In this document: positions 23,580 to 58,229 of the stretch, in pieces
Numbering within the stretch: position 1 is the stretch's first letter
How the letters are laid out: each line of letters opens with the position of its first letter
From: Octopus sinensis
Lineage: Eukaryota
Assembly (NCBI RefSeq): GCF_006345805.1
Contig: NC_043023.1
Location: 8,184,001 to 8,248,000, forward strand
Length of the DNA: 64,000 bases
Direction: 5' to 3'
The notes under the pieces: generated by a model
The model's input: the letters and a program-made list of their open reading frames with translations, nothing else
The model's database searches: none
Told to the model about the DNA's origin: nothing
Program-made: the position numbers and the translations under genes

Positions 23580-23663
23580 ATGGATGTAAATAAGATTATA
23601 AACAACATTCTGGATGGGGACTTTGAAGATGTCAAACAACTTATCAAAGAAAATCCTGAAACG
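23580..23663 (+). CDS. Exon 1 (first coding): [28 protein letters not shown]
   Basis: Pyrimidine tract + AG at 23576-77, ATG 23580, donor GTAAGT at 23664; phase 0 matches exon 2. Confidence 0.75.
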
Positions 23664-26600: not shown

Positions 26601-29100
26601 AGACCAATGGTGGGACTTGAATGACTGGAACTATACATACATACATATATATATATGGTGGCTGCCCCCTCGTTATCGAGTATGGTCATTGTATGAAGCT
26701 TAATCAATGTTGTTATCGTGCAATGCCTGTGCAAGAAGATTTTTTTTAAAGTGAGGAAAGGCTGTGCACTGAGTCAATCCCACTCACTAAGCAACAGCAG
26801 CCATAATCCGAAAAGAAGAACAAGTCAACATCATCGGTAACCACTGAGCTGCAGGTTTTATGCCGGAGTTATCCCAGTTACCTGAGTTACCTTCGCCTAG
26901 AAGGATGCCCTAACAAAGGCTAGGAGTCCTTCACTCCCAATGGTTTAACCATGCGATCGGGTATTCAGTCCGATTATTTCTATGTTCCCGTGCATGATAC
27001 AGCCTTAAGACTTTTATTGACTCTCAAGAGTTCCTCCACCCTTACATACATACATACATACATGTGTGTGTGTGTATGTATATGTGTATATGTATATGAA
27101 GGCGCATGACTCAATGGTTAGGGCAACAGGTTCACAATCAGGAGATAGTGAGTTTGATTCCCAGTCTGGGCTGTGTGTTGTATTCTTCAGCAAGACATTT
27201 TATTTCATGTTGCACACTGGTGTGTGTGTGTGTGTATCTTTCTTTCTTCATCTTTCATATCCCTTTCTTTCACTCCAGCATCTTCTTTACTCTCTCTTCT
27301 CTTCTCTCCTTTCTCTCTCTCTCTATTCTTCCCTCCTCTCTCTCTCTCTCCTTTGATATATTTTATATATCTTCTCTTTCTTCTCTTCAGGTCAACCAAA
27401 TAAACTCACACAGTAAAACTTTCTTAATGGCAGCTTGTGCACAGGGCAGCACAAGTCTAATAGCCTTCTTGATAGAATCTGGAGCCAATATAGACATGAG
27501 TGACAAAGGCAAGAATACAGCATTGCATTATGCTGTGAAAAGGTAAGGCTTGAATTAATTAAAATCTTCAGATCTGCTTTTGTTTTGAAATTTTTTGCAA
27601 TTCCAGACTATTTGAATATCCAAAGATACCATAATAGTGGCAGTGTGACACGATAACAACATGATAGTAGTAACCAAATAACATCTTTTTCTCATTTTCT
27701 CCATGAATCCTCTTCATTGAATCACAAAAATCTTTTTCGTTATTTTTTGTCAAAACAGATATGATTAGTATGGTGCGTTACACCACCACCAGTGGCCAGG
27801 TTGTCACTCATCTGTCTCGCTTTATGACTACGAAGATGACTCGTGAGTCATCCTATACATACATACATGCATACATATCAGTATATATATAACAAAGTAT
27901 GGAGATATTCTTTGAGAGCCAACAGTTCTTAAGATTGACTCATTGTGATTCAGTGTCTTCTCTTCATATGGATTATGGGGAGAGCGATCAATTTTTCTCC
28001 AAAGAAAATGTTATTTGAGATCTAAAGCAACAAGAAAGATTCTCTAGCTTGTTTTGACAGTAAATAATCTGTAAATTTCTTACAGAAATTATTTCTCACC
28101 TCCATCTGCAACTCACTCAACACATTTTGAGATCTATTATATTTTGAATTGTGCTTCATAAGGTCATCTCTGGACAATAAAACATGTTTTGAAGTTCTTG
28201 TTAGTTTCTATAGCTTCTGCAGTCACAAATTGTTCCAGAATTTTACACAAACACACACACACCATCATTGTCATCGAATGTTCCTTTTCCATGCTGGCAT
28301 GGGTAGGAGGGTTTGATAGGAACAGACAAGTCAGAAGACCACACCAAACACTACTGTCTGTTTAGGTTTGGTTTCTATGGCTGGACGACCTTCCTAACAC
28401 CAACCACTTTGCAGAGTGTACTGGATGCCTTTTACATGCCATCCGAACCAGTGAGGTCACCAATTAATTGCGAGACAAAGACCTCTCAACTGGTTGAGGT
28501 CGTGAGGTGGGGGAGCTAATATTGCTGGAGAGAAAGGTGTCTTGCATTAGAAGAGGGACATGGCTCCTTCAGATGGAGAAGACAGAGGAGGGAAACACTA
28601 GGTTAAAATCTTGTGTTTGGCCCAAGCAAAGAAAAAAGCGAAAAAATAGTGCAATAGGTGTGAAACAACATGTAGTAAACGAATAGGAAAAAAAAAATAT
28701 GGCGAACGGGAGACGACTCGGAAAATTAAAATCTCACCACTTCCCCGTTTGTCGGCGAATTTTTTGTTCTTCATTTTCGTTTTTTACATATTATTTTACA
28801 CCCGGTACTCCACTTTTGTTCAATTTTTGTGACGGGGCGGGTGGGTGAGGTGCGGACTCGGATGATTCACACGATCTGGTAACCCCACTCGACAACCGGT
28901 CCCAAAAATGAAAACAAGAAGTGTAATAGGTGTAAAACAACATGTAGTTTTCGGATCCTGTGAGATTGATCGTGTGAATTTTCCGAGTCATCTCCACCAT
29001 CTTCACCAACGTATTCGTTTACTACATGTTATTTTACACCTATTGCACAATTTTTTTTGCTCGAGTCAAACACTAGAGTTTAACTTATACACACACACAA

Positions 29101-29135
<35 letters not shown>

Positions 29136-30447: not shown

Positions 30448-30498
<51 letters not shown>

Positions 30499-31024
30499 GA
30501 GGCTGTAGTATACATAGGTTTTTATGCATTTAATGGAACACGAGTGTATATTTAATGTAATTATTAAGTGAATGTGATGTTTTATGTTTGTTTTTCTTCC
30601 TTTCAGCCACCGAACTGATGTTGTCGCCTTCTTAGTCTCCAGTGGAGCAAATGTTAATAAGCATAACTCATGGGGCGACACACCTCTACATCTGGCTGTG
30701 GAGAAGAACTATGAAGATGTAGTCAAAGTCCTGTTAAATAGCAAAGAAAATAACAATTTACAGGTCAGCGAATATATATATATATGTGTCTGTGTGTATA
30801 ATGATATGTATGTTGGTTTGTGTTATATGTATATGAAACAGTTTATATTTATATTTTTTTAATTAAAAAATTTTCTTCAGCTCACACAGACCTGTACATA
30901 TATACACAAATATACACACACATAAACGCATATATACACAAAAATGCATAAACAAATGATCAGTGAAGATATAAAACACGTATGTATATGTAGGTATTTA
31001 TGTATATATGTATGTGCGAGAGTG

Positions 31025-31056
<32 letters not shown>

Positions 31057-34000
31057 GCATACACATATGTGTGTGTGTATAGATACATTATAAATCTCAT
31101 TTATTTTTCCCTCACCTTCATTCCACCTGTTTAAATTAATCTGATTCTGTTTTTCTGACATTTTTCCTTTTTTACCTTTTTCCCCCAATAAACACCATCT
31201 TTAATGTCTTTATTGTTTATCTTTTTTAGGTTAATCTGCGAAATATTTTGGGTTGCATAGCTCTCCATGTTGCCTGTCTCTTTGGACACATAAAGGTTGT
31301 TGAACTTCTCCTGCAACAGAATGGCACGGATGTTAATGCTGTGCAGGAAGATGGTTGGACAGCTCTCCATGTTGCCTGTCACTTTGGACACAGAAAGGTT
31401 GTTGAACTTCTCCTGCAACAGAATGGCATCGATGCCAATAAGGTGAACCTCAAGGGTGACACTCCTCTACATCAGGCAGTTCGAAAGTAAGTCCCCAATG
31501 GATTTGGATTATCCAAATCTGTTTCTTTAATGTTTGTTTTCTTGTTTTGAGTCATTCATGTCATAATCCCACCATGGGTCGTCATGCTTCACCCCTCTCT
31601 CTCTCACACACTCTAATGACACTGTAATCTAACTTCATTAATTAATCATCATAATTATTGTTGTTGTTGTTGTTACCTGACTGGATTCTTTACTTCATCT
31701 CATCCTTCGTTACCTCAACGATACAGGTTCAAATCCTCTCCCTTCTTCCTTTCATTCCATGTACCCCCCCTTCTCTTGTAATTTTCCTCTTTCCTCTGGC
31801 CCTGGGCTAAATGCAGAATCATCCCCTTACTTTGATCCGTTTGTGTTCCAAGTTCAACTCCTGGGGTCAAAATCTGTACCAGTAATATCTAGGGCTTCAT
31901 TTAATAAATTGTCCTCCCTCTTTACTCCTGTTCTTGTGTCTGATTACTGTTGGAAAATATTCAGATAAAATTTATAAGTGTTGATATCTGGACGGTTTCC
32001 TAGTCTTCTGATTGTTTACGGAATATGCGGTGTAATTTTTAATTATGTATCTTATGCAAATAACGTACATCTTCTTTACGCTGGTTATGGTAAATCTGTG
32101 TTTTGAGTTTATACCCTTCTTATAAATTTTATCTGAATATTTTCCAACCTTTGCCTTTTATTAACCCTTACGTCTTTCTACCCTTTTAGGCCCCTCTTTT
32201 TTGTATATTACGAGTTACCCTTCCAACCCCTTTCGTTGTATTAACAATTAATATTATCTTAATTTTAATGATTCTTAATACTATTTTAGTTAACAGTATG
32301 TATGTGTATGTTGTTGGCATCGTTTTTGTCTCAGGAGACAATGGAGTTGCGCATAAAATAGTCCAGTCCGGCTTTTACATTTCATGTCCTGATACATTTC
32401 CTGCTGTGGCTGTGTAGTCCTATCCTGGACAAACACTCCCTCTGGCAGGTACTGCAAATGTAGCGAAGACTGTTCCTGGCTGGTTGTAGTGTCATAGTTT
32501 CTTGTTGACTTCTTTTCTTGTCTTTCCATTTCTCCTCTCTCTCTCTGTCACTCCTTTGTATTCCCTCTTTTACGGTACGTCCCCAATCTCCACGGTTGCT
32601 GGCAATTGCTTCCCAACTGCTAATATTGATGTTGCAGGCCTTCATGTCCCTTTTGCAAACATCCTTGTAACGTAAGAACAGTCTACCCACAGACCTAGTA
32701 CCCCTAGCAAGCTCTCCGTAGAGTATGTCCTTGGGGATTCTACCATCTTTCATACGGCTAACATGCCCAAGCCATCTCATACGTCTTTGTGTGAGGAGTG
32801 CAAACATGCTTGGTATTCCTGCTTGCTTGAGGACATCTTTGTTGAGGATATGATTCTGCCATTTGATGCGGAGGATTTTCCGGAGGTAGCGCAGGTGAAA
32901 GATGTTTAGGCGACGCTCTTGGCGTGTGTATAGCGTCCAAGTCTCACTTCCATACAGTAGAGTGCTAAGTACACATGCCTGGTAGATCTTCATTTTCGTG
33001 GTCTTAGTCAGCTTATTGTTGTCCCATGCCCGTTTGGAGAGTTGGGCCATCGCAGCAGCTGCCTTGCCAATGCGTATATTGAGCTCAACATCAAGGGATA
33101 GGTTGTAGGTGACGGTAGAGCCAAGATAGGTAAACTTCTCCACCTCCTGTAATCTGTGGTCTCCAATATGTATGTTTGGGATGTCCGATGTAGCCTGACC
33201 CATGATGTTGGCCTTCTTAAGTCTGATAGCTAAGCCAAAGTTGTTACATGCTTGCTCAAAACAGTTAATGAGCCTTTGGAGGGCTTCTTCTGTGTGTGAT
33301 ACCAGAGTGGCATCATCAGCAAATAGCATCTCCTTGATCAGGACGTTTCTGATTTTGGTCTTGGCACGCAGGCGCGAGAGATTGAACAGTTTCCCGTCAC
33401 TTCTACTGTGCAGAAACACTCCATCATCTGATGTCTGAAAGGCATGTGAGAGCAAGAGCGAGAAGAAAATGCCAAATAATGTAGGAGTGAGGACACAACC
33501 TTGCTTTACCCTGCTTTTCAATTGGAAGGTGGCTGATGTTGAACCATTGTGCTATATGGTGCCTTGCATATCATCATGGAAAGACTTGATGATCCTCAGC
33601 AGCTTTGGTGGACATCCGATTTTTTGGAGCAGGATGAAGAGGCCTTTTCTACTTACCAAGTCAAAGGCCTTTGTTAGATCAATGAAGGCCATATATAGTG
33701 GCATTTTCTGCTCTCTATGTGTATGTATATATATACATATATGTGTGCGTGGTTGTTTTCGGCTATATGTATTTGTTGATATATATATATATATATATGG
33801 AAATCAAACCAAATCAAAATAGATGAACATCAATGGAATTTGTATCTTTGTGGTTCAGTACCGGTGGCACACAGAAAACCATCCGATCGTGGCCGTTCGC
33901 CAGCCACATCTGGCACCTGTGTCGGTGGCACATAAAGACACCATCCGAAGACCGGCGACGTAGACAGTCCACCTGTGCATACCTTCCTTCTTGTGACACT

Positions 34001-34599: not shown

Positions 34600-34631
<32 letters not shown>

Positions 34632-35925: not shown

Positions 35926-36004
<79 letters not shown>

Positions 36005-36262
36005 TATATATATATAATATATATATATATATATGTATGTATGTGTATATATATATATATATGTATGTATGTGTATATATATATATATGTATATGTATGT
36101 GTATATATATATATATATATATATGTATGTAGGTGTGTATATATTTATATATGTATGTATGTGTGTATATATATATGTATGTATGTGTGTATATATATGT
36201 ATGTATGTATGTGTGTATATATATATATTATGTATGTGGTGGTATATATATATATATGTATG

Positions 36263-36308
<46 letters not shown>

Positions 36309-36383
36309 CTAGCATGGAGAACGGACGTTAAACGATGATATGATGTTGTGTGTATATATATATATATATAATAATATTTATAT

Positions 36384-36429
<46 letters not shown>

Positions 36430-44288: not shown

Positions 44289-46124
44289 AAATGCATCAAC
44301 ATGTATCCATCGGGAGATCTGATGGTATATATTGTCTACTGTTTCAGAATTCAACCAACTCTTTGATTCCCGTATAAATAAAGGTCATTACTGATGTGTG
44401 ACTCTATTTCAAACATTTGATGATCATATGTAAATTGTAGTAATGTCTACTTTGGTGAGAAGAAGCCACTCTTGCAGTCAGCTACCCACCCAACTGGAAT
44501 TGTCTAACAGTTTGAGCAGTTTATTAACTATAATGTGTTGGTGTGCTGCCTCAACTGTGACACTAATTCTTACTTCCTTTACTTCACCTTCATTATCCAA
44601 AGAGGTTTCTTTATTAATTATGGAAACGTTGTTATTTTTGGATATGTCTGTGTGGTGTTGCTTTTGTTGTTGTGTCTGTTCTAAGTATTCTCAGTTCTCA
44701 TGTAACTTGTTTGCTGTCATGTTGTTGTGTTATATTTATATATACAATACTCCTCCATATTTCTTGTGTGATGGCCATTTATGGATTCACCAAGCTAGTT
44801 GAATAGATAGGTTGTTGTTAGTTTGTTGTGTTCTAATATTTGTGATGTTTGTTCCATTATATTCCATATATTTGACTTGATGCTATGATTTGGTTTTAAA
44901 TTGTTTTTTATTGAATATCTTGTGATATTTGTGATTGGCAAATGATTATTTACGCATTAATTACCAATAAACTTGATGTTAATCAGTAATGTTTGTTCTG
45001 TTTAATATAATGACCATATATATAAAATATGTCATAATGTTGAGAATAGACTAAAAACAAATGAAAATGGGAAATGGATTCAATTAGAGATGATGTCGGA
45101 ACTTAATATTGTGCAATCAGTTTAAGCGCTGGAGATACAAACTATTTGTATACGTAGTTGAACTGTTGTGTAATTTGGGTATCTACGAAGTATATTTGTG
45201 AAATATTGTAATCATCATTTTATACTTTGTCATTTGTAGTGCTGTGCTAAGCTTGGGTTGCCGATCGAAAAGAGGCTCTCTGGTGTAGGAGTCGCTGGCT
45301 ATCTAGCCCACCAGGGGGCCAACTTGTACAGGAAAAATAATAAGAATGTAGCTCCATTGGACCTCATTGGGGATGCAGATTTGAAAGAAAAATTTAAAGA
45401 ATTATTCCCCCCACCACAGTAAGTATTCGTTGGCAGTGACAGTTTATTTTCTATTTTGTATATAATCATGTTTATGTTTGTTTAATTTTAATTCTACCAA
45501 TACATTATACTGCCATAGTGTCTTGATCAAAGGCCACACAACAATAGTATGAAGAACAATAAACAAAATGCAGTTGTTATGTGATCCAATGAAGAGCACT
45601 GTTTTGGTTGGTAGTTGTACCTCACTGTCTACCACCACCCATCTACCTTTCTTAGTTCCCTATTTTAAAGATTTGTGACCAATAAGAAAATGTAGAACTA
45701 AACAGTGAAGTGAATGAACAGATTTTGAAGTTGTTACATAAAAACAAATGGAATTTATCTGTCTACCAACATGTTCTCTCTCTTCTCTGTTCCAATCAGT
45801 TCATTATTATGAAAGGTTTCGTAAGAAAATAAACTACACACCCAAACAGCGTGTGTATATATATCATCAACATCATTATCATCATTGCTTAACGTCCATT
45901 TCCATCCTGGCATGAATTGGATGGTTTGAAAGGGAGCCCGCCAGAAGTCTACACCAAACTTCTGTCTGTTTTGGCATGCCCAGCAGAGTGGACTGAGTAA
46001 CACCAGCGCAGGCAAGGCCAGTTTTGGAATGGTTTTTACAGCTGGATGTCCTTCCAAATGCCAGCCATTTTACAGTGTGGACTGGATGCTTTTTATGTGG
46101 CACCAGCACTGGCAGGGTCACCAA

Positions 46125-49200: not shown

Positions 49201-52200
49201 AAGGAAATCTGTTGTGGCCAGTGGAAGATTTCCTAATCAATATTGGGTAATTGAAATCACAAGTATGAGAACATAGGTAACCATTTTCATAGATGCAGCT
49301 CTAAAAAGTTTTGTGGATGGTAAATGTTGATGTGCTTTTATGTCGCAGAAAAATTCCTCTTGTGACTGGTTTAAATCTTCACAAGCAATTTCTGAAAAGC
49401 TTGAGCAAGCATAGACCATCGCACCACCTCCAAGGTAATGAAAGAGGTCTTTGTGAAAGAAAATGTAGCCAGCCATGCTAAAAACACCATTGCACAGTAA
49501 AGAATGTGTCCAGGTTTAACAAATGAGATTGGAATCAGTACTTTTAACTTAGGAATCAAAAATAGTGAACTTTATTGCATAAACTGTGGGTATTTTTAAA
49601 CAATAATTTGTATCTCGATTTAAATCTGTCATGGTTCATGGAAGAGGATATCCTCAGACCAGTTTGCATCCCTTTTTCATCTGGTATTGAGTCATGATTT
49701 AAGGGATCTACAATATGTAACTTCAGGTGTGTATCAGGTGGTGAATGACGAAGAGCTCAATTTATCACACCTGTCCTTATAAGAAGCTAAACAGTATGCA
49801 CATAGCTCAGTAGAAGGTAAATCTAACTCGTTTGGGTTTTGATCCAATCAACTGAGGCAAATAAAATTGTTTTGGAGGAACACATCTGAAGTTGATAAGA
49901 TGTAGATCAATGAACATGGACTCACCTATAACAAGGGGCAGGTTTGTATGCAGGGCAAACCTAGACTGAAGTGTTTTGCTAAAGAACTTTACACATCGCC
50001 TTGTTCAGGAATTGAAGCCGCAATTTTACTGTGTGAGTCCAAAAGCCTAACAACTTAGCCATGCACCTCACTCTGGTCAGTCTGGTGTTTCATAATATTC
50101 TGTACTGTAAACATAAAACAAACATGTAATATTTGTTAGAAATGAATGTTATAGGTGGGATGTGTTTTATGTTTTTTCCACAGATGTATGCTTTGTGAAG
50201 TGAATAAAGCCAGCATGGAGTTACAACCCTGTGCACATACTGTTTTATGTGAAGATTGTAGCAAAATTCAACTTAAAACATGTATAGAAAGCAAAAGAAG
50301 GAGAGTTGGTAAGAATATGATTTGATGATCTGTCTGTTTGTCACATGACATTATGGAATGGAATAATGTTGTATCAACCCAGATCTGTCATAATCTGACA
50401 GACGTATGATAAAAAATGTCCCAGGTGTCTTTTCTCTTTGATAGTATATCCATGACTACACCCACTGAATATTGTCTTTATCCAAGTAGGAAACCTGTCC
50501 CACATCAAAAGAGTACTGTCTGCAACATAAGACTAATACGTTTTACTGAAATATAAATGAAATATCAATAAATCTCCAAGGTCCCATCAGTAAACATCAA
50601 CTTTTTATATTCAGTTGTCAGCTTTTATATGAGGTTAATGATTTATAAGTACCTTGGGAAACTGATAATTAAGGACAACAGTACTTCCTACAACATCACA
50701 GTCAGCTTTGTAATGTAAGAATTTCAATGACAAAATCTCAACTGAGAGTTTAAGGATCTGACTCTTAGCGAGTCTTATATATTCTTGAGAATGAATTCTA
50801 GTGTCCCATTTCAGATATAACTCCTTTGCAATAATGTGTAGATAAACAGTTTTAAGTTAAGGAGGTTTTATACAAATGTAATGTTTCAGGATACCTGTTA
50901 TCACTTTCTGCTCCACCTGTGTAGAACTAATCATTGCTCACCTGGAAAAAGAAAAAGCTGCTTATTAAGGAGGATGAATGACATTGAAATATCTTCAGAT
51001 CTTTCCTGAATCAGGTGGTATTCTGGTGAAGTGTGATGTGGGCAGTTAAAATTAAAGATTACCAACAGTAACATATAAAAATGAGGGCTGGGGTATGTTT
51101 ATCCTTCCTGAAGCAATGTGTCATGCCTTTGTGGCCAGATCTTTGAAGACCAGATTGGTTGACACTGGAATTTAGCAGAAAATGAGAAGAATATTGGTTA
51201 GTGAAGGTTCGAGATGAGAGGACAATGGCATGTCATATGACCAGCACAGACATAACAAAGGAAAGACAAAATTAAGAGAAAAAGAGTGTTATGAAGGGAT
51301 AACTAAGTGAGAGAATTTCAGAATCCTTAGATTAGTATATAGGATGTCTTAAGAGAAAGATGAGATTTAGAAAGGTTTGCCTATTTTGTTGTGGTTCTAA
51401 ATATTGAACTATTATATAGTAACAGCTTAGAAAGTGTTGACTGAAAGCATAGTGGTCACCAATTGACTATTGATGATATGAATGCCTTACAAAAATGGAA
51501 TATAGATTATTAAAAGAGACAAAGAAATTTTACTATGAAGTATAAAACTTTGAAATGCTTATTTCAGTGTGTCCAAAGTGTAAAGAAAAAGCAGTCAAGA
51601 CGGTTGTAGAATCTGTTGGTGAGTATAAAATATCTGTAATTGATTTCTATAAATTTTACCTTCACCTGAGATATATTATTTGTGTGAATGACTGAGAACA
51701 GGTTCCATTCTTAATTTCCAATTCTTATTTCAGAATGTCCAAAGTGTAAAGAAAAAGTAGAATCTTTTGGTGAGTATAAAATAACTGTAATTGATTTCTA
51801 TAAATTTTACCTTCACCTGAAATATATTATTTGTGTGAATGTCTGAGTACAGGTTCCATTCTTAATTTCCAATTCTTATTTCAGTGTGTCCAAAGTCTGA
51901 AGAAAAAGGAGTCCAGACGGTTGCAGAATCTGTTGGTGAGTATAGAATAACTGTAATTGATTTCTATAAATTTTACCTTCACCTGAGATATATTATTTGT
52001 GTGAATGACTGAGAACATGTTCCATTCTTAATTTCCAATTCTTATTTCAGTGTGTCCAAAGTCTGAAGAAAAAGCAGTCAAGACGGTTGCAGAATCTGTT
52101 GGTGAGTATAAAATAACTGTAATTGATTTCTATAAATTTTACCTTCACCTGAGATATATTATTTGTGTGAATGACTGAGAACAGGTTCCATTGTTACATT

Positions 52201-55200
52201 TCTTTCGAATGGTTAGCGATAAAAGTAATTCTATTCGTTACCTACAAATGCAAGAATATCCAATAAAGGGGTTTTATAGAAATATGGAAACATGAGACAC
52301 AGGAAAAATGTCTTTCACGATGAGGCCAAAATACAAAAGATAAAATATAAACCCTGAAGCTGTTCTCTCCCCATAATGAGATACATTCACTTTTCTTTCA
52401 TCTCATTGTTGTCTCTCTCTCCTTCCCTGTTTCTTCCTTCATCTCTCTCTCTCTCTCTCTATGCATCTACATGTAGCAGCCTCTGTACTTTCCAGTCGTG
52501 TAACAACATGAATTGTATTTAAAATATTGATATTACAGAAATTTAATAAAATGTCCAGCAGTGTTGGCCCTGTTGCTAAAATGGTTAAATTAGAAAAAAA
52601 AAACAAACAATAGAGTTAATATTGTCTTTTGAATGAAGGAAGAAAAACATTTTGTTGTTTAATGGTAAACAGGTGAGTTAATGACAGTGTTTGTTTGTTG
52701 TACATTTTCAATAAGTTTACTGATTATTGTTGTTGATGTTCTTGTTGAACAAGATGGTTAAGTTGAAAGCTTACAAGTGTGATCACCCTGTCTTTTTTTT
52801 CACTGTTAGTAAATCTATCATTACATCCATTAAACGATGTCTTTGTCCAAGTAAGAAGCTTTGGTCTGCTGCTGAGACAATTGCTCTCTCTCTCTCTCTC
52901 TCTCTCCTTAAGATGGACACTGGTTGCAAGATACAATACAATCGATGTTATTGTCCTCATCATTTACAGTCTGCTCTCCTTGCTTCCATGTAATGGATGG
53001 GTAATCACTGTCCAAGTCAGTTCTTATTCAGAGTTACTGTCCCCCTTGACTGCTTGAGAAACACATCTCCCTTAAACATTCCACCTTTTCTATGGTGGGA
53101 TGCCCCCCCCCAACACCAACCACTTCATAAAGAGTCCTGAGTACATTTTAATGTGGCACAAGCACTAGAAAGATTTTCATGTGTCCAACATTGAAACTGG
53201 AATAGCTGTAGGTTGCACACTATCAGTCACTTAGTTTGTGCTTGTTATGGGGATCGGCAGATTTATGAGAAGAAATTACTCAGGCGAAATCATCTAAGAA
53301 AACATTCATGGATGACATAAAAATGCTAACAAGAGATCCAAAGTATATGCAATCAGTCCAAGATAGATTGGATGGACTAATTAATTGCTCAAGAATGCTG
53401 TTTGAAACAAATAATGAATGCATTCTGACATTTGTGAAAGGTCAACAGAAGCAAGTGAAGTTCAAAATAGCAGGAGAAATGATGCGAAAGGTTAAAGAGT
53501 AACTTGTAAAACGTTTTGGACTGTGGTAGATGATCTCATTGTCCGATAAGAGTAGAGGCATTGATGTCATTGCAGAAACCGAGGATGGGCAATAAGCATT
53601 TGCCAAGTCAAAACTTCTGGGCAAAAACAAGATTTGGTGCTTGAAGTTTGATCTATATCACCATCTTGATAATATATTCTTAAATATCACTTCTTTTGTA
53701 CCATTTCAGATATTTTTCCTTTGCGATAATCTGTGTATGAACATTTGCATGTTGTTAAAGATGTTTTGTGCAAGTATACAGTGTTTTAGGATACTTGCTA
53801 TCACTTTCTGTTTCACCTGTGTAGAACTAATCATTGCTCATCAGGAAAGAAAAGCATTTCATTAAGGAGTCCTTAAATATTTCCTGAATCAGATGAAATT
53901 CTGGTGAACTGTGAGTTGCATTGTTTAAAATTAAAGATTAAAAGCAGCAACGTTTGACAAAGATAACAGGTGTGACATGAGTTTGTGTCAAGGTCATTGA
54001 TGACCAGCTTGGTTGACATCAGAATTAAGCAAAAGAAGAGGGGAATGTTGATTAGTGAAGTCCAGTGGTGAGGGGACAATGCCATGTCATAGGTTTAGAA
54101 TGGATACAAGAGATACATGTGATCATTAAATAAGATGATTGCAACGTTGTTAGATTAAGTAGGATGTCTTAATAGAAAAAGGAGGCTTAGGAAGGTCAGT
54201 CTATTTTATTATGGGCCTAAATATTGAGCCATTATATAGGACCACAGTAGAAAGTATAAAACTATCAACCAAACCTATAGTGGTCAGCAGTTGTCCATTG
54301 ATGATAGGAATGTCTTACAATAATAAAATATAAACCATTAACAGAGATCAGGAAATTGTGCTATGAAGTGTAAAATTTGGAAATATTTATTTCAGATTCT
54401 GTAATGGTAGAGGAGATTCATCTTCATAGGGTGTCCCAAAAGTTGGCAGGTAAATGGATGGAACTTGGTGAGTATAAAACACCGAATTTCTATAAATTTT
54501 GCTTTCAGCTAAACTTTTGTTTGTTTGAATGACTGAGAACCGATTCCATTCCTAATTTCCAATTGAAAGTTTAGCTATAAAGTAAAGCTATCACTGAAAT
54601 TTCATAAAATATCTATGGACGTCAGCACGGTTGTAAAATGTATAAATTAGAAGGTCCAGTAGAGTTAATATTATCGTTTGTAAAAGGGGACTCAAAAATA
54701 TTGTTGTTTAAGAGTAAACAGGTGAATTAATGACAATGTTTTTGCTTGTTTACACTTTTAGTAAGTTTACTAGTAGAGTGTTGTTGTTGATGTTTATTTT
54801 GGCAGATATCTGCCTTAATCTGGCAGAATTAAGGGGAAAGGGTTCCAGATGTGCCATCGCTCTTTCTCTTGGGTGAAGAGGACCACATTATCAAATGTAA
54901 CCTTTTTAAAATGAGAGTGTGCATTGTGTGGGACATGTTGTCATCTCTCCCCTGGCCAGTCTGTTTTTCTATATTTATTGTAATTCTTTAGTCCCAGGTC
55001 AACATATATTTCCTGTCTCTATAGAAGACAGGCCCCATTGTTGATTGTGTTCATGGCTGGATTGAACTCAGCATTGTAAGTTAATGAAACACTCATTTAT
55101 ATTAGAAAAAAAAGAATCTCAACAGAAAATTCAAACTCAACTTGATCTTGTTTCTCAATTGAAATCATTTCACTCTCCTTTACATTACAAATGTCACGTG

Positions 55201-58200
55201 GAAAGGCATGAACATCACAATATCCCATTTCCCTTTCTCCGACAGTTTAACACAACATAAAATATCATTTATACAATGCTCCTATTATTTACAGCAATGT
55301 CTTCTACCTCCCTATGGTACCTATATACATCTAGATAGAATGAAGCATAGAGAAATGTCTTTACCAGGTACATTGAGCGGTGCTGGGGATTAGATTTGAA
55401 CCTTTGATCCCTGACTCAAGGGATCATGACAATATCCCCTGAGTCAGCTGATAGAAACCATCATCTTCATCATCATTTGACGTCTGTTTTCCATGCTGGC
55501 ATGGGTTGGACTGTTTGACTGAGGTCTGGAGAGCCAGTGGCTGCACCAGGCTCCAATCTGATCTGGCAGAGTTTCTACAGCTGGATGCCCTTCCTAATGC
55601 CAGCCACTCCGAGAGTGTAGTGGCTGCTTTTTATGTGTCACCAGTACAGGAGCCAGTCAGGTGGACCTAGCATCAGTCATGTTCGGATGGCCTTTTTACG
55701 TGCCACCAACACAAGGAGTCAGTCAGATGACACTGGCATCGACTACATTTGGATGATGCCTTTTATGTGCCACCAGAACGGGGGCTAGTCATGGGGCACT
55801 GGCCACAGCTGCAATTTTGGTTTTACTTGACTCAACAGGTCTTCTCAAGCATATCATGTCACCCGATGCATTAAGGATACTCTTAAATGGGCCGGACATG
55901 CAACACTGGCATCGGCCATGGCTGCGATCTCACTTTAGTTGCTGGGTCTTCTCAATCACAGCATATTTCCAAAGGTCTCGGTCTCCTGCCATTGCCTCTG
56001 TGAGGCCCAATGTTCAAAGGCCATGCTTCACCATCTCATTCCATGTCTTCCTGGGTCTACCTCTTCCACAGCTTCGTTCTACAGTTAGGGAGTGGCACTT
56101 CCTCACACAGATGTCCTAATCCATACATAACACGTGACCATACCAGCACAGTCGTCTCTCTTGCACACCACATTTGATGCTTCTTATGTCCAACTTTCCT
56201 CTCAGGGTGTTTACACTGTGTCGTGTATGCACACAGACATTCCACATCCAGCGGATCATACTACCTTCATTTCTGTCAAGTCTATGCATGTCCTCAGCAG
56301 TCATGGCCCATGTTTCACTACCATGTAGCATGGCAGTTCACACTCAGAAATGATTTATCTAAATTAAGAAAGGACATCATCTACAACATTGCCAGCTTGC
56401 TATACCTCTGGGTGTCATACAAAATATACCAGTCATATACTGGGATAAAATGAATCCACTAACACCAGGTCCATTATCATCATCACCTTACATCCATTTT
56501 TCTAAGTTTGTAATGGTCAGACGACTTCTCCCAGAGTTGTTGTGGTCCTTTGTCCAGTTTGATCGCTTGTTTCTTTCCACTTGAATTCCAGGCACTTCTT
56601 TACCCAGATTTCATCTGCCATGTCCCTTCTATATCTATACCATTATCTTTTTTCTTGTACACTATCACAGATTCTTCTGAGATCCAGTTATTTGGCTCCA
56701 AGATTTCAACACATTAACATTACACTTCTAGAGATGTCTGCTCACCTCATTTCCTGGCAGTTTCCATTGTATCTTTCACATTCTATGTAACATTGCATGA
56801 GGTGTATTTGTAAAGTGCAATCTCTCCCTCATATGGAGACAGAATCCCTTAGTTGCCAGTAGACATAACAACTCCCTGTACATTTTTCATCTCATTTTCC
56901 TTCTAACTACTGTGCTTTCAGAATAGTTTCCTCTACTTCTAATTCTGTCCTTTAGGTAACAGAAACTATCAACTATGTCTTTCATACTTGTTCCTATGAA
57001 CTATTCCTGTACACATACAAAGTCCTTCCTCAGCCCTAACCTTAACCTGCCCTCCCTGTAAACTTGCTTGTTTGTGAATGCAGTGATTCTATCAGGACCC
57101 GAGTGTTGTAGGTGTATGGTGTAGATGTTGGTAAAACTCTTCTCATTGCTTTATTTACTCTAGGGCCTCTCCTGTATTAGATTCTTTGAAATTGTGGCCT
57201 TGATCCAGTGAAAGAAGTTCTTGTTATAAGTCATGAATCCAAAAACCTTAAGCCAGTGCCCTCTATAATATGTGATATTTACCTAACAGTATTATATTTT
57301 TACTTTGGGGTGGTTGAAATCATTCAGGTACACAATCCCCACTTTTGAGATATTTCTGAATGTTGATAATTTTTAAATATTTATTAATCATAGGTGGAAA
57401 GACATCGCAAATGACTATTTCAGGCATTGATCACAGGACGTTATCAAACGACTGAGATTGTATTCCTCCAAAGAGTCTCTGGAGTAACGTTACTCAACAA
57501 GGTGTGCAGGCTGGAGATTTGGGGTCTCTCCAGGTCAAGTGACTGCTTCTCTGCATTGAGAATTCACAGCTCCAGTAATCCTGGCATGTGATTAAAATAT
57601 CACAGGAAAGAACCACAAGAGGGATGAAGGAGGTGCCTGAAGACTCTTCCCCTACAATTCTCCTATGAATAGAGGGCAGAGAAAATGGACGGATGGATGA
57701 AATTATCTGTTGGTGGTCTTTGTCAATTCTTTAGGCTCTCATACACTGCTACCCACACAAACACTTCTCCTGCCAGTTGTTCACCAGACATTTTCTCATG
57801 TGTAATTTTCAATTCTTTAAAATATTCTTCTCCTTCTCCAGCCTTTATTTCAAATTGTTTGATATTTTTGTCAACATCTTTAGAAATAGATAACAATGTC
57901 TTCTAATTTCCCTGTTTCTTAAGTATTTCTCATTCTTCTATTCACATAATTTCTTTGTCCTAATTAATACAGGTTTTATATTATCGTTAATGCTGTTGCA
58001 ATTATTTCTTATTTCTTTTGCAGGAAGGGAATTAGGAATTCGACAAAATGACCTGGAAATCATCAGGCATGACTATCCTCAAAGCGTTAGGGAACAAGGC
58101 TTCCAGATGCTGTTCAAATGGCATCAAAGTACTGATCCAGAGAAACGTACACTTCGAATATTAAAAGCAGCTCTTAAGGAAACTGAATGTTATGATGCAC

Positions 58201-58229
58201 TCAAATGTTTATCATCAGAATTCAATTGA
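23580..58229 (+). CDS. Spliced gene (14 predicted coding exons, ~555 aa): Mind-bomb-like ankyrin repeats + RING + death domain; putative E3 ligase/adaptor
   Basis: Exons 23580-23663, 27391-27542, 30607-30763, 31230-31486, 36607-36642, 39663-39875, 45240-45418, 50184-50308, 51568-51618, 51734-51769, 51885-51935, 52051-52101, 54396-54467, 58024-58229; all GT-AG; phases chain correctly except exon 5 (1 nt short). Confidence 0.85.
23816..24440 (-). mobile_element. Degenerate LINE RT fragment (CR1/Jockey-like) in intron 1
   Basis: [14 protein letters not shown]...SINSGIP resembles the xLDIxKAFDxVW...SGVPQG RT motifs. Confidence 0.55.
26130..26470 (-). mobile_element. 3' end of an RTE-like LINE with two C2H2 fingers
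   Basis: [21 protein letters not shown]...[22 protein letters not shown] then 3'UTR; related 3'UTR piece at ~26660-26990. Confidence 0.6.
27391..27542 (+). CDS. Exon 2: ankyrin repeats ([10 protein letters not shown]...GANID...NTALHYAVK)
   Basis: ttcttctcttcag acceptor, GTAAGG donor, phase 0 to 2. Confidence 0.92.
28601..29085. mobile_element. Non-autonomous TIR element (~485 bp)
   Basis: ~85-bp imperfect TIRs (ggttaaaatcttgtgtttgg...gtgcaataggtgtgaaacaacatgtagtaaacgaata vs reverse complement at 29010-29085); flanked by TA; internal TIR-like copy at 28921-28948. Confidence 0.75.
29707..30430. mobile_element. Foldback-type element, ~720-bp imperfect palindrome
   Basis: Arms align from aggcatacctccacaac... 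to ...tgtgtaggtttgcct, with nested subrepeats; centre ~30070. Confidence 0.8.
30607..30763 (+). CDS. Exon 3: ankyrin repeats ([31 protein letters not shown])
   Basis: ttcctttcag acceptor, GTCAGC donor, phase 2 to 0. Confidence 0.9.
31230..31486 (+). CDS. Exon 4: ankyrin repeats incl. a recent 102-bp internal duplication
   Basis: [22 protein letters not shown] twice, [10 protein letters not shown]; donor GTAAGT; phase 0 to 2. Confidence 0.93.
31950..32147. repeat. Perfect 29-bp inverted repeat with 140-bp spacer
   Basis: ttggaaaatattcagataaaatttataag (31950-78) / cttataaattttatctgaatattttccaa (32119-47). Confidence 0.9.
32292..33715 (-). mobile_element. 5'-truncated RTE/BovB-like LINE (second family)
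   Basis: 379-aa ORF: [35 protein letters not shown]-terminal CSTC...HSHSRKC; upstream [12 protein letters not shown] in another frame. Confidence 0.92.
33799..34631 (+). mobile_element. RTE LINE 3'UTR with partial tandem duplication and expanded internal repeat
   Basis: Same subfamily as 4924-5470; 33799-33957 repeats the start of the segment resumed at ~34030; (ATG)n tail. Confidence 0.9.
35421..35556 (+). ncRNA. Type-I hammerhead ribozyme motif with long stem-II loop (intron 4, sense)
   Basis: atct-CTGAAGA(35429-35)-agcc...ggct-GAAA(35536-39)-CAGCTG-TA-agat; all core bases intact. Confidence 0.8.
36607..36642 (+). CDS. Exon 5: 36-nt exon (KRHYDVV...), apparently frameshifted
   Basis: Strong pyrimidine tract + CAG, donor GTTAGT; continues the ankyrin helix, but 37 nt are needed to reach exon 6 in frame. 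Confidence 0.65.
37587..37666 (+). ncRNA. Type-I hammerhead ribozyme motif (intron 5, sense)
   Basis: gtgg-CTGAAGA(37593-99)-aggcc...ggccc-GAAA(37651-54)-CATATG-TA-ccgc; A-C mismatch at the base of stem II. Confidence 0.7.
37860..38960 (+). mobile_element. Degenerate RTE LINE, endonuclease/linker region
   Basis: [14 protein letters not shown] (APE GDFNxxVG motif), MWWW, REKCV...DGSLAVSD; many stops. Confidence 0.65.
39663..39875 (+). CDS. Exon 6: ankyrin repeats (RTPLLEA...[19 protein letters not shown])
   Basis: AG 39661-62, donor GTAAGT 39876, phase 0 to 0. Confidence 0.92.
40192..41091 (-). CDS. Gypsy RT end/RNase H fused in frame to integrase C-terminal tail
   Basis: [30 protein letters not shown] then directly [13 protein letters not shown]...SPA...RTLRT; integrase core absent. 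Confidence 0.85.
   Translation of the reverse strand: MTNYLCKFLSNYSEVTAPLRQLLQSDTLWSFDKPQIEAIKKIKEMITRKPVLQFYDPDLPIKITTDASKHGLGAILEQKHNERWLPVSFASRATTQAEQNYCPIESEALSIVFACKKFHQFIYGTHFRIKSDEEPQLALLALRTTKLQNGAPSPANQIMNRTLRTNLPNILHDKIGIRPHEKKKSNITTELPELIPHDTVRIKFNNNWFRRGKIIKKLEQPRSYLVITEEGNTVKRNRQHILKTNEHVRITEELDYENIFPKSTNTHEKTKTAQLQNSTLQNNKTTKSGRRIIIPSRYR
41369..43156 (-). CDS. Gypsy gag-protease-RT (N-part), frameshifted near 41410
   Basis: Zinc knuckles (CHYCGYNH...[15 protein letters not shown]), protease [41 protein letters not shown]; shifted frame continues [10 protein letters not shown]...SQDDIII. Confidence 0.9.
   Translation of the reverse strand: MENLPHPKDLDFNQENLAAAWKKWKKEFNLFLIATESDMKPDKVKTSMFLTCIGSKGRDIHSTLDFDSPDEEMNLQTVIEKFDAYCEPRKNITFLRHKFFTCGQAEHQKFDEYELCQKAQQCEFGNLTDSLTKDILICGIRDMRLRERLLREPNLDLQKTIQAGQSAEQTRLQSRMLNATSETRDNEISRVYSQHDRKGAKTQITCHMQSRHQNEQGGSDRKPAKFQAPSQHYVTNCHYCGYNHKRNKCPAFHKTCEKCKKQGHYAKMCKSRKFVHKVEIHTDDESDDDTHALEMITANNSRVHKIEKFKTPKDIWTVELKVNNSNVTFKIDTGADVTVLPFREYRNIIPKPQQQKTSTRLSAYNNTAIKVLGKCTAVIKYKELSKQIKFIVAKTNSHAVIDAKTAKDLNLIQRISKINSSNTNDILEKYEDCFGEIGTLSITHHITVDPQITPVIHPPRSVPFSIKEKLNKELKRMTELDIIKPVSEPTDWVNSLVIVEKANGKLRLCLDPKNLNKAIKRQHFKLPTAEDIFAQMHNPKYFSKLDASNGYWQIPVDEESSHLLTFNTPFGRYRFTRLPLEFTAPVKFSKKKFQK
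43472..43622 (+). mobile_element. RTE-type 3' tail remnant (target of the Gypsy insertion)
   Basis: gttggcattagaaagggcatcc...ccagcatggaaaatggacattaaatgatgatga. Confidence 0.7.
45240..45418 (+). CDS. Exon 7: last ankyrin-like repeat and linker ([25 protein letters not shown]...LFPPP)
   Basis: ttgtag acceptor, GTAAGT donor, phase 0 to 2; resembles the ACFLAxxGAD...SPLDL segment before the RINGs of Mind bomb proteins. Confidence 0.88.
45865..46120 (-). mobile_element. RTE-type 3' tail fragment between TA tracts
   Basis: catcattatcatcattgcttaacgtccattt...gctggatgtccttcc. Confidence 0.7.
47750..49700 (-). mobile_element. Highly degenerate CR1/L2-like LINE (endonuclease to RT)
   Basis: NTFDLLFT...LGDSDHTPI (APE end), LQSDLD...C...K...HFG (RT thumb), many stops. 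Confidence 0.55.
50184..50308 (+). CDS. Exon 8: RING finger CMLC-x11-CAH-x3-CEDC-x7-CIES
   Basis: ttttttccacag acceptor, GTAAGA donor, phase 2 to 1; C3HC4 spacing with last Cys replaced by Ser. Confidence 0.9.
51568..51618 (+). CDS. Microexon A (51 nt): [17 protein letters not shown]
   Basis: ttatttcag / GTGAGT, phase 1-1, no stop. Confidence 0.7.
51734..51769 (+). CDS. Microexon B (36 nt): [12 protein letters not shown]
   Basis: ttatttcag / GTGAGT, phase 1-1, in-frame 15-nt deletion relative to A. Confidence 0.68.
51885..51935 (+). CDS. Microexon C (51 nt): [17 protein letters not shown]
   Basis: ttatttcag / GTGAGT, phase 1-1. Confidence 0.68.
52051..52101 (+). CDS. Microexon D (51 nt): [17 protein letters not shown]
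   Basis: ttatttcag / GTGAGT, phase 1-1. Confidence 0.68.
53240..53520 (+). mobile_element. Degenerate non-LTR RT remnant (FMDD motif)
   Basis: FMDDIKMLT...RMLFETN resembles RT motif 5; family unresolved. Confidence 0.4.
54396..54467 (+). CDS. Exon 13: death domain N-terminus ([24 protein letters not shown])
   Basis: ttatttcag / GTGAGT, phase 1-1; joins to give WMELGRELGI. Confidence 0.85.
55456..56342 (-). mobile_element. 5'-truncated RTE LINE
   Basis: [11 protein letters not shown]...RLCWYGHV, 3'UTR and catcat tail. Confidence 0.88.
58024..58229 (+). CDS. Terminal exon: death domain ([33 protein letters not shown]...[10 protein letters not shown])
   Basis: ttcttttgcag acceptor, TGA at 58227-29; death-domain pattern W..LGR.LG...I..I..........ML..W. 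Confidence 0.9.

What the first reader, a model, noticed from the sequence alone, without database searches (positions are those of the whole stretch)
23580..58229. Mind-bomb-derived ankyrin-RING protein with a grafted death domain
Seen: ~8-9 ankyrin repeats, a segment [25 protein letters not shown], one RING and a C-terminal death domain. Established: MIB1/MIB2 have N-terminal MIB-HERC2/ZZ/REP substrate-binding domains, an ankyrin array ending in ACFLAxxGAD...SPLDL and 2-3 RINGs, but no death domain; MIB2 ubiquitinates death-signalling proteins such as RIPK1. Inference: this is a lineage-specific chimera that lost the Mib N-terminus and gained a DD, which could recruit an E3 to DD platforms (TNFR/MyD88/RIP-type). 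It may be part of an expanded immune or apoptosis family.
Basis: partly seen in the sequence, partly recalled or inferred. Interest (0 to 1): 0.7.

Follow-up and report, generated by a model that had tools for sequence, protein, structure and literature searches.

The report
Octopus Mind-bomb-derived ankyrin–RING–death-domain gene
This is one copy of an octopus-only gene family that arose when a Mind bomb 2 ubiquitin-ligase gene lost its front end and gained a RIPK1-like death domain; the copy in this window is damaged (frameshift, truncated RING) and already carries an automatic "MIB2-like" label in public databases.

Summary
The features are real. A 14-exon gene on the + strand (23580-58229, all introns GT-AG) encodes about 8 ankyrin repeats plus caps, a RING, four 12-17-residue cassette mini-exons and a C-terminal death domain. 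The window is Octopus sinensis DNA, and RefSeq already calls this gene "E3 ubiquitin-protein ligase MIB2-like".

Descent from Mind bomb is well supported:
- The protein aligns collinearly with octopus MIB2 (E 3e-55).
- Five of seven ANK-RING introns share position and phase with the MIB2 gene.
- Human MIB1 is the best natural PDB match to the odd last repeat.
- No MIB-HERC2, ZZ or REP exons lie upstream.

The death domain is closest to that of RIPK1. All roughly 90 named relatives come from three Octopus species.

- A 36-nt micro-exon (36607-36642) lacks one T in this window, which breaks the frame. A second O. sinensis copy and the O. vulgaris orthologue (556 aa) are intact.
- The RING lacks its last zinc-ligand pair and scores below the Pfam threshold.
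- The coding sequence evolves at the intron rate (9 nonsynonymous, 0 synonymous changes versus O. vulgaris).

Verdict: a new variant of a known kind. This copy is probably degenerate, and the function is untested.

The parts
23580..23663 (+). Exon 1: start codon and N-terminal cap of the ANK array ([28 protein letters not shown])
   Evidence: 72% identical to the N-terminus of paralogue P0008. GT donor. The intron after residue 28 (phase 0) matches the MIB2 intron at 323|324.
27391..27542 (+). Exon 2: ANK repeats 1-2
   Evidence: tblastn with paralogues. AG/GT. The phase-2 split codon 79 matches MIB2 codon 373.
30607..30763 (+). Exon 3: ANK repeats 2-3
   Evidence: 100% identical to P0002. AG/GT.
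31230..31486 (+). Exon 4: ANK repeats 4-6, including two near-identical 34-residue repeats
   Evidence: 100% identical to P0002. AG/GT.
36607..36642 (+). Exon 5: micro-exon (RHYDVVASMLVQ in intact copies). It is 36 nt here instead of 37, with one T missing at 36624, which shifts the frame.
   Evidence: Comparison with L001 and with O. vulgaris L004. Translation.
36858..36875 (+). Alternative first coding exon 'MVRQDK', used by RefSeq's truncated models of this locus
   Evidence: P0308, P0313 and P0315 start with MVRQDK followed by exon 6. Coordinates.
39663..39875 (+). Exon 6: ANK repeat 7 and the first half of the split repeat 8. The frameshifted reading ends at TGA 39670-39672.
45240..45418 (+). 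Exon 7: second half of the split last ANK repeat plus the C-cap ([42 protein letters not shown]...)
   Evidence: Family profile against human MIB1 ANK 8v0e: 30.6 bits on this segment. Introns 300|301 and codon 360 match MIB2 589|590 and codon 647.
50184..50308 (+). Exon 8: RING (zf-C3HC4_3) with ligands C361, C364, C376, H378, C382, C385 and C393. The 8th ligand is absent and 'RCPKCK' is deleted relative to paralogues. There is a 3-nt insertion relative to L001.
   Evidence: Pfam 25.7 bits (cut-off 27), profile positions 4-39 of 49. Paralogue comparison. AF2 pLDDT falls to 34 in the C-terminal half, against 72-77 in paralogue P0008.
51568..51618 (+). Cassette mini-exon 9a ([17 protein letters not shown]), phase 1-1
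51734..51769 (+). Cassette mini-exon 9b ([12 protein letters not shown]), phase 1-1
51885..51935 (+). Cassette mini-exon 9c ([17 protein letters not shown]), phase 1-1
52051..52101 (+). Cassette mini-exon 9d ([17 protein letters not shown]), phase 1-1
51608..52202 (+). 166-bp tandem repeat (3.7 copies, 88% matches). Each unit is one mini-exon plus its intron.
   Evidence: TRF. Unit alignment.
54396..54467 (+). Exon 13: first death-domain exon ([24 protein letters not shown]), phase 1-1
58024..58229 (+). Exon 14: rest of the death domain and the stop codon
   Evidence: Pfam Death 46.5 bits. RIPK1 DD is the closest solved relative. AF2 pLDDT 93-96.

Best explanation
What it is (shown). The locus is one member of an Octopus-specific gene family derived by duplication from a Mind bomb 2-type gene. 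The ancestor lost the N-terminal substrate-binding modules (MIB-HERC2/ZZ and REP), so the protein now starts exactly at the first ankyrin repeat. It kept the ANK array with Mind bomb's peculiar split last repeat, and it kept RING1. The terminal RING2 exon, which starts in phase 1, was replaced by phase-1 mini-exons and two death-domain exons. That death domain is closest to the DD of RIPK1.

How it works (inferred for the family). The DD docks the protein onto oligomeric DD platforms, while the IAP/Mind-bomb-type RING recruits an E2 to ubiquitinate components of those platforms. The ANK rod serves as spacer or binding surface. A disordered linker of variable length, built from cassette mini-exons, tethers the DD.

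This particular locus (shown and inferred). It looks like a degenerating member.
- Its RING has lost the last zinc-ligand pair. The loss is shared with the second O. sinensis copy and with O. vulgaris.
- Its amino-acid sequence changes at the intron rate.
- The allele in this window carries a 1-nt frameshift in exon 5. As assembled, it can make either a roughly 230-residue ANK-only fragment or the 316-333-residue N-truncated ANK(2.5)-RING*-DD products that RefSeq models.

If the product is functional at all, it more likely acts as a non-catalytic DD adaptor or decoy than as an active ligase.

The confidence given (0.6) is for the whole statement. I put the identity and descent at about 0.9, the family mechanism at about 0.45, and 'this copy is degenerate' at about 0.55.
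For: - Gene model and domains.
- Identity of the locus: P0310 (XP_029651866.1, O. sinensis chromosome CM016885.1) is 331/331 identical to the window's exon 5-14 product.
- Mind bomb descent: collinear BLASTP against REP-bearing octopus MIB2, E 3e-55. Shared intron positions and phases, including a phase-1 end of the RING1 exon in both genes. Family profile against PDB gives MIB1 ANK at E 2e-11, the best natural hit. Best query TM-score 0.47 to 8v0e. Family HMM scores fall in steps: family 130-231 bits, octopus REP-bearing MIBs 98-108, beetle mib1-like 87.
- Plausible intermediates: ANK-RING-RING members without a DD (P0017, P0128, P0131).
- No N-terminal domains upstream.
- DD type: RIPK1 DD at E 7.6e-11, then ankyrin-3 and PIDD.
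- Octopus-only distribution.
- Degeneration: truncated RING. AF2 RING pLDDT 69/53/67/34, against 65/74/77/72/73 in paralogue P0008. Frameshift. 9 nonsynonymous and 0 synonymous changes versus O. vulgaris, with an exon rate of 0.54% against an intron rate of 0.65%. 7 nonsynonymous and 1 synonymous versus L001.
Against: - No transcript or read data were available. The frameshift could be an assembly error: this window and L001 differ by 80 single-base indels against 216 substitutions, which is far more indels than expected from real polymorphism.
- The ORF is intact in L001 and in O. vulgaris.
- With mini-exon 9a or 9b spliced in, a CPKC pair lies 9 (9a) or 26 (9b, with 9a present) residues after C393. 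The loose RING consensus (C-x2-C ... C-x[4-48]-C-x2-C) is then formally met, so ligase activity is not excluded.
- The substitution counts are small (14 events in all), so neutrality cannot be told apart from diversifying selection.
- The NJ tree gives only 12% bootstrap support for family monophyly.
- The donor of the DD was not identified.
- No experiment links any family member to DD signalling.
Confidence: 0.6

Rival explanations
1. The gene is a fully functional E3 ligase. On this view the frameshift at 36624 is an assembly error. The RING is a split RING whose last Cys pair comes from the CPKC of cassette mini-exon 9a or 9b, so alternative splicing decides whether the protein is catalytically competent.
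For: - Intact ORFs in L001 and in O. vulgaris.
- A high single-base indel rate between the two O. sinensis copies suggests sequencing indels.
- C403/C406 (9a) and C420/C423 (9b) satisfy the RING spacing rule.
- RefSeq isoforms contain every combination of the four cassettes.
Against: - AF2 gives pLDDT of about 30 for the mini-exons and does not complete the RING.
- CP[KR]C mini-exons also occur in paralogues whose RINGs are intact (P0008, P0012), so they did not evolve to compensate.
- The Pro after C7 and the tight C7-x2-C8 turn that form the E2 surface are absent.
- Amino-acid changes accumulate at the neutral rate.
Confidence: 0.25
2. The locus is simply a dying pseudogene with no function. 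It is transcribed, but its products are irrelevant.
For: Frameshift, truncated RING, nonsynonymous rate equal to the intron rate with 13 nonsynonymous to 1 synonymous events across three copies, and an in-frame 3-nt indel.
Against: - The 1.67-kb ORF is intact in two of three copies.
- The DD and ANK regions are predicted with pLDDT above 90.
- All 26 splice sites are canonical.
- With only about 0.6% divergence, too few mutations have occurred to show decay.
Confidence: 0.2
3. The protein is not Mind-bomb-derived. On this view it is an ANK-DD protein of the ANKDD1 or ankyrin type that picked up an IAP-like RING.
For: - NCBI names some isoforms 'ankyrin-3-like'.
- The closest solved RINGs are cIAP1/2.
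- The ankyrin-3 DD is the second-best DD hit.
Against: - The alignment with MIB2 is collinear from the first ANK repeat through RING1, and the introns correspond.
- The MIB-specific split last repeat is present.
- MIB RINGs belong to the same Pfam family as IAP RINGs. No MIB RING chain appeared among the PDB hits, so the cIAP match does not speak against MIB.
- ANKDD1 itself was not compared.
Confidence: 0.04
4. The DD exons belong to a separate downstream gene and the fusion is an annotation artefact.
For: There is a gap of 2.3-5.9 kb of intron between the RING exon, the mini-exons and the DD exons. Some O. vulgaris models skip the first DD exon.
Against: - Independent annotations in three species join RING and DD in dozens of paralogues.
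- All junctions are phase 1.
- The first DD exon has an AG acceptor and no start codon of its own.
Confidence: 0.03

Closest known systems
Mind bomb 2 / Mind bomb 1 (MIB2, MIB1) RING E3 ligases
   Same: Same ANK array, repeat for repeat, including the split last repeat with the ...CYLVHKGAN...PLD motif. Same zf-C3HC4_3 RING1 directly after it. Shared intron positions and phases with the octopus MIB2 gene.
   Different: It has no MIB-HERC2/ZZ (MZM) or REP substrate-binding modules. It has one RING, here truncated, instead of two or three. It has a C-terminal death domain, which no described Mind bomb has. In human MIB2 the MZM region is what binds oligomeric RIPK1 (PMC5912950); here that region is gone.
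cIAP1/cIAP2 (BIR-UBA-CARD-RING) and oyster BIR-DD-RING IAPs (BIRC11-type)
   Same: A death-fold domain combined with a zf-C3HC4_3 RING in one chain. cIAP1/2 are the closest solved RINGs. Oyster IAPs with DD plus RING show that molluscs build such combinations (PMC8917759).
   Different: It has no BIR domains. The order is RING then DD, not DD/CARD then RING. It has an ANK array in place of BIRs. The two are not homologous outside the RING.
RIPK1 death domain (and Drosophila IMD, by my recollection)
   Same: The DD is most similar to the RIPK1 DD among solved structures (E 1.5e-6 with a single sequence, 7.6e-11 with the family profile).
   Different: It has no kinase domain and no RHIM. Sequence identity is low. 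Whether it binds the same partners is unknown.
ANKDD1A/B (ankyrin repeat and death domain containing 1)
   Same: ANK repeats followed by a C-terminal DD (from my own knowledge).
   Different: ANKDD1 has no RING. The ANK-RING part here is explained by MIB2. I did not compare it directly.

Membership tests
Mind bomb (MIB1/MIB2) | N-terminal MIB-HERC2 / ZZ / MIB-HERC2 (MZM) module | tested here: not met
   Absent from the 556-aa product (Pfam). Absent from + strand open segments of 4.5-23.2 kb upstream. The O. vulgaris full-length orthologue starts at the ANK array.
Mind bomb (MIB1/MIB2) | REP (Mind bomb SH3_15) repeats | tested here: not met
   No SH3_15 hit in the product. Octopus MIB2 P0171 and P0173 do have it.
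Mind bomb (MIB1/MIB2) | ANK array ending in the atypical split repeat, followed by a RING | tested here: met
   Collinear alignment with P0171, E 3e-55. MIB1 8v0e gives 30.6 bits on the last repeat. TMq 0.47.
Mind bomb (MIB1/MIB2) | Two or three C-terminal zf-C3HC4_3 RINGs | tested here: not met
   One RING only, and it is truncated (25.7 bits, cut-off 27). Some family members keep two RINGs.
Mind bomb (MIB1/MIB2) | Common ancestry by gene structure | tested here: met
   Five of seven introns are at the same position and phase, one is shifted 3-4 codons, and one sits at the equivalent site one repeat away. The RING1 exon ends in phase 1 in both genes.
RING-type E3 ligase | Eight zinc ligands in cross-brace spacing (C3HC4) | tested here: not met
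   The RING exon has seven ligands (C361, C364, C376, H378, C382, C385, C393) and the 8th is missing. The spacing is met only if CPKC from mini-exon 9a or 9b is counted. AF2 confidence is low.
RING-type E3 ligase | E2-dependent ubiquitin transfer | not testable with these tools
   Needs a biochemical assay.
Death domain (DD subfamily of the death fold) | Pfam Death match above threshold and a helical-bundle fold | tested here: met
   46.5 bits against a cut-off of 22.6. AF2 shows five helices by DSSP, with pLDDT 93-96. PDB hits are RIPK1, PIDD, ankyrin, Fas and TNFR1 DDs.
Death domain (DD subfamily of the death fold) | Homotypic DD-DD oligomerisation | not testable with these tools
   Needs binding assays.
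IAP | At least one BIR domain | tested here: not met
   No BIR hit.
ANKDD1 | ANK plus DD without a RING, and orthology to vertebrate ANKDD1 | not tested
   No ANKDD1 sequence was at hand. The presence of a RING and the MIB2 gene structure argue against membership.

The most novel reading that the evidence does not exclude
The four tandem cassette mini-exons may act as a splicing-controlled switch. Only isoforms that include a CPKC-bearing cassette (9a or 9b) would complete the second zinc site of an otherwise truncated RING. Alternative splicing would then turn a death-domain-docked ubiquitin ligase on or off. More broadly, the Octopus ANK-RING-DD family may have taken over the role that expanded IAP families play in other molluscs; octopuses have the fewest IAP genes among the ten molluscs surveyed in PMC8917759.
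Probability: 0.08. Interest if true: 0.75.

Novelty: new variant of a known kind. Interest (0 to 1): 0.45.

Why it matters
Mind bomb ligases are known from Notch signalling. Human MIB2 is also known to restrain RIPK1-driven cell death, and it binds RIPK1 through its N-terminal MZM module. In Octopus, a duplicated MIB2 gene discarded that module and acquired a RIPK1-like death domain instead. This happened through a clean exon replacement that can still be read in the intron phases, and the product then multiplied into dozens of genes.

If the family is active, it is a natural experiment in retargeting an E3 ligase to death-domain signalling hubs. It would also be a candidate component of cephalopod innate immunity or apoptosis control, about which little is known.

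For genome annotation, it shows that the RefSeq names given to this one gene family ('MIB2-like', 'ankyrin-3-like', 'RF_0381', 'PSMD10') hide a single coherent, undescribed architecture. This specific copy matters less, because it is probably decaying.

Tried and rejected
- I first included the ORF at 53308-53502 as an exon and spliced the RING as ...LKT|CPKCKEK. Both were dropped after tblastn with RefSeq proteins. That ORF has no Pfam match.
- An open segment at 24232-24411 has no Pfam hit.
- I built an NJ tree of the 142-column last-ANK-plus-RING segment. The first attempt timed out. The second gave the expected grouping, but only 12% bootstrap support for family monophyly and 74% for the REP-bearing clade. 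I therefore did not use it as main evidence.
- DD-profile and ANK-RING-profile searches of the 5.8-billion-protein database returned only 11 and 23 short Octopus proteins. The donor of the DD and any non-Octopus members remain unresolved.
- Foldseek on the whole model is dominated by designed ankyrin proteins by E-value. Only the TM-score ranking points to MIB1.
- The look-up of P0006 found no gene. The P0018 locus showed no neighbouring gene within 10 kb, so I did not demonstrate tandem clustering directly.
- Literature searches for 'MIB2-like', MIB2 plus octopus, and death domain plus cephalopod found no paper describing this family. One search was mis-specified and wasted.


Full report
**What is in the window.**
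The window is octopus genomic DNA, rich in microsatellites and retroelements.

Guided by RefSeq proteins found with a first rough translation, I built a 14-exon model on the + strand. Every acceptor is AG and every donor is GT.

| Exon | Coordinates |
|---|---|
| E1 | 23580-23663 |
| E2 | 27391-27542 |
| E3 | 30607-30763 |
| E4 | 31230-31486 |
| E5 | 36607-36642 |
| E6 | 39663-39875 |
| E7 | 45240-45418 |
| E8 | 50184-50308 |
| 9a | 51568-51618 |
| 9b | 51734-51769 |
| 9c | 51885-51935 |
| 9d | 52051-52101 |
| E13 | 54396-54467 |
| E14 | 58024-58229 |

Pfam on the conceptual 556-residue product gives three domain types:
- Ank, 7 stretches, 168 bits.
- zf-C3HC4_3, 25.7 bits.
- Death, 46.5 bits.

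By eye there are eight repeats plus N- and C-caps, and the eighth is split by an insertion of about 30 residues.

**Which locus this is.**
Positions 29.7-63.6 kb are 98-99.7% identical to the unplaced O. sinensis contig VCDQ01005362.1 (L001). That contig carries a gene with at least 22 RefSeq isoforms named 'MIB2-like', 'MIB1-like' or 'ankyrin-3-like'.

RefSeq protein XP_029651866.1 (P0310) lies on O. sinensis chromosome CM016885.1. It is 331/331 identical to the window's exon 5-14 product. The window is therefore that chromosomal locus, and L001 is a second copy, probably the other haplotype.

The O. vulgaris orthologous region (L004, OX597842.1) is syntenic from window position 5.1 kb to 60.7 kb. 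It encodes an intact 556-residue protein (P0307) that is 98.4% identical to my model, exon for exon.

1. *A frameshift in exon 5.* Exon 5 is a micro-exon of 37 nt in L001 and in O. vulgaris. In the window it is 36 nt, because one T of a TT pair is missing at 36624. As assembled, the frame shifts and ends at TGA 39670-39672. This explains why RefSeq's models for this locus start downstream, at MLVQ (36631), MVRQDK (36858) or MR, and are only 316-333 residues long.

   The two O. sinensis copies differ by 216 substitutions but also by 80 single-base indels in 33 kb. That indel excess suggests sequencing errors, so the frameshift may be an artefact. I could not decide this without reads.

2. *A truncated RING.* Every paralogue has ...C-x2-C-x(6-7)-CPxC after the C-x-H. 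This gene reads ...[20 protein letters not shown]. The six residues RCPKCK seen in its closest O. vulgaris paralogues are deleted.

   The Pfam match covers profile positions 4-39 of 49 and falls below the gathering score. The paralogue P0008 scores 44 bits over positions 3-48.

   The deletion is shared by L001 and O. vulgaris, so it predates the species split.

   AlphaFold2 with a 28-sequence family alignment gave the following mean pLDDT values:

   | Protein | ANK array | RING (10-residue blocks) | Cassette linker | DD |
   |---|---|---|---|---|
   | P0002 (intact O. sinensis copy of this gene) | above 90 | 69 / 53 / 67 / 34 | about 32 | 93-96 |
   | P0008 (paralogue with complete RING) | above 90 | 65 / 74 / 77 / 72 / 73 | 26-34 | 89-95 |

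   P0008 also shows the expected beta-hairpin and helix in its RING. P0002 does not.

3. *Four cassette mini-exons.* Between the RING and the DD lie four mini-exons of 51, 36, 51 and 51 nt, all phase 1-1. Each is one unit of a 166-bp tandem repeat together with its intron. RefSeq isoforms contain every combination from none to all four.

   Units 9a and 9b carry CPKC, while 9c and 9d carry CPKS. Homologous mini-exons occur in most paralogues.

**Test of Mind bomb descent.**
- *PDB profile search.* A profile of the last split repeat, linker and RING from 15 family members (A1) was searched against PDB sequences. Designed ankyrins score about 10 bits per repeat.
- *Representative library search.* The same profile was searched against 1.84 billion representatives. 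After the family itself, the first proteins matching the whole profile in one stretch were P0171 and P0173. Pfam shows that both carry Mind bomb REP (SH3_15) domains, and both are octopus MIB2 or mib1-like proteins. Next came mib1-like or MIB2-like proteins of a beetle and an acoel, and an uncharacterised bryozoan ANK-RING protein.
- *Pairwise alignment.* BLASTP of the model against P0171 aligns residues 13-426 with 308-735 without rearrangement (29% identity, E 3e-55). The octopus protein begins exactly where the MIB2 ANK domain begins.
- *Gene structure.* I located the introns of the MIB2 gene (L003) and of paralogue P0018 (L002). The correspondence with the window gene is:

  | Window intron | MIB2 intron | Phase | Match |
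  |---|---|---|---|
  | 28\|29 | 323\|324 | 0 | exact |
  | codon 79 | codon 373 | 2 | exact |
  | 131\|132 | 425\|426 | 0 | shifted 3-4 codons; P0018 has the MIB2 position |
  | codon 217 | codon 477 | 2 | equivalent site, one ANK repeat away |
  | 229\|230 | 519\|520 | 0 | exact |
  | 300\|301 | 589\|590 | 0 | exact |
  | codon 360 | codon 647 | 2 | exact |

  The RING1 exon ends in phase 1 in both genes. The phase-1 RING2 exon of MIB2 therefore corresponds to the phase-1 mini-exons and DD exons here.
- *Possible intermediates.* Several family members still have two RINGs and no DD (P0017, P0128, P0131).
- *Structure search.* Foldseek gives MIB1 ANK the highest query-normalised TM-score (0.47).
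- *Tree.* An NJ tree has the expected shape but weak deep support.

**No hidden N-terminus.**
Pfam on all + strand open segments of 28 residues or more from 4.5 to 23.2 kb finds only a reverse transcriptase. Positions 398-4615 are a 107-bp satellite. The O. vulgaris isoforms begin with MDVNKI, with MEGCDEKVRELE followed by exon 2, or with MAACAQG.

**The death domain.**
Among solved structures the RIPK1 DD is closest (E 1.5e-6 with a single sequence, 7.6e-11 with the family profile). Ankyrin-3, PIDD, Fas, CRADD, TRADD, TNFR1 and FADD follow. The database search with the DD profile returned only short Octopus proteins, so the donor gene is unknown.

**Distribution.**
Every named relative that carries the family's segment is from O. 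sinensis, O. vulgaris or O. bimaculoides. That is about 90 proteins across. After removing segments more than 88% identical, 41 distinct family sequences remain. Absence from other cephalopods is not proven, because their proteomes are poorly represented.

**Selection.**

| Comparison | Nonsynonymous | Synonymous | Other |
|---|---|---|---|
| Window vs O. vulgaris | 9 | 0 | exon divergence 0.54%, intron 0.65% |
| Window vs L001 | 7 | 1 | one 3-nt indel |

Over the three copies this comes to about 13 nonsynonymous and 1 synonymous events. Strong purifying selection is excluded. Neutrality and diversifying selection cannot be separated with so few changes.

**Mechanism.**
Shown:
- The domain architecture.
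- Descent from MIB2.
- The exon-replacement geometry.
- The RING defect.

Inferred:
- In family members with complete RINGs, the DD docks the protein on DD oligomers, and the RING ubiquitinates components there.

Two findings from the literature fit this inference. Human MIB2 reaches oligomeric RIPK1 through its MZM module and ubiquitinates lysines in the RIPK1 DD (PMC5912950). Molluscan IAPs combine DD and RING (PMC8917759).

For this copy, the defective RING, the neutral rate and the frameshift make a non-catalytic adaptor or decoy, or no function at all, more likely than an active ligase.

**Novelty.**
The proteins exist in RefSeq and GenBank under automatic names. I found no paper describing the family. 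It is a new variant of the Mind bomb kind, not a new kind.

Noticed in passing
window 398-4615: A 107-bp satellite with 39.7 copies at 92% matches. The O. vulgaris syntenic region holds several blocks of the same satellite (L004 10.4-19.9 kb).
   Followed up: partly
window 39917-43472 (ORFs 40192-41091 and 41369-43156, minus strand): A Ty3/Gypsy-like LTR retroelement fragment (aspartyl protease, RT, RNase H) sits inside intron 6. It is present in both O. sinensis copies but absent from the O. vulgaris orthologous intron, so it is an insertion or deletion that postdates the species split.
   Followed up: partly
window 15521-17243 (+), 5477-6235 (-), 32382-33521 (-), 56116-56331 (-), 61795-62199 (+): One long copy and several partial copies of a non-LTR retrotransposon ORF2 (RVT_1 plus a PHD-like finger). 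The copies at 16.3-17.4 kb and 5.5-6.2 kb also match L001 at 86-87% identity.
   Followed up: partly
window about 4943-5350, 8531-8758, 17375-17851, 28160-28520, 33780-34600, 43313-43700, 45890-46060, 55455-55790, 62419-62724, 63126-63569 (both strands): A short interspersed repeat recurs at least ten times. It is recognisable by the pseudo-translation '...[25 protein letters not shown]...'. It is probably a SINE, but I did not classify it.
   Followed up: no
window 13707-14099, 19476-19879, 20538-21604, 35700-36540: Very long imperfect (TA)n / (TATG)n microsatellites. GC content drops to 0.196 at 20-22 kb.
   Followed up: no
window 29743-63628 versus L001: The two O. sinensis copies differ by 216 substitutions and 121 indels, 80 of them single bases (indel-to-substitution ratio about 1:1.8). 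That is too many indels for ordinary heterozygosity and suggests residual assembly indel errors. This bears on the exon 5 frameshift.
   Followed up: partly
window 26201-26437 (-): A 78-residue ORF with two C2H2 zinc fingers lies in intron 1. The C-terminus of the RT ORF at 32382-33521 ends in a similar finger, so this ORF is probably the tail of a retrotransposon.
   Followed up: no
window 53308-53502 (+): A 64-residue ORF in the intron between mini-exon 9d and the first DD exon. It appears in no RefSeq isoform and has no Pfam match.
   Followed up: partly
L004 69870-70963 (about window 60.2 kb onward, + strand): The O. vulgaris annotation starts a gene with weak C2H2 zinc-finger hits about 2 kb downstream of the stop codon. 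I did not examine the corresponding window sequence.
   Followed up: no
L003 (O. bimaculoides CM046626.1): The octopus MIB2 gene P0171 lies inside, and antisense to, a gene annotated with a cytochrome P450 domain. P0171 itself shows REP, ANK and two RINGs but no MIB-HERC2 or ZZ hit in my Pfam scan, so even this 'MIB2' may be N-terminally shortened or incompletely modelled.
   Followed up: no
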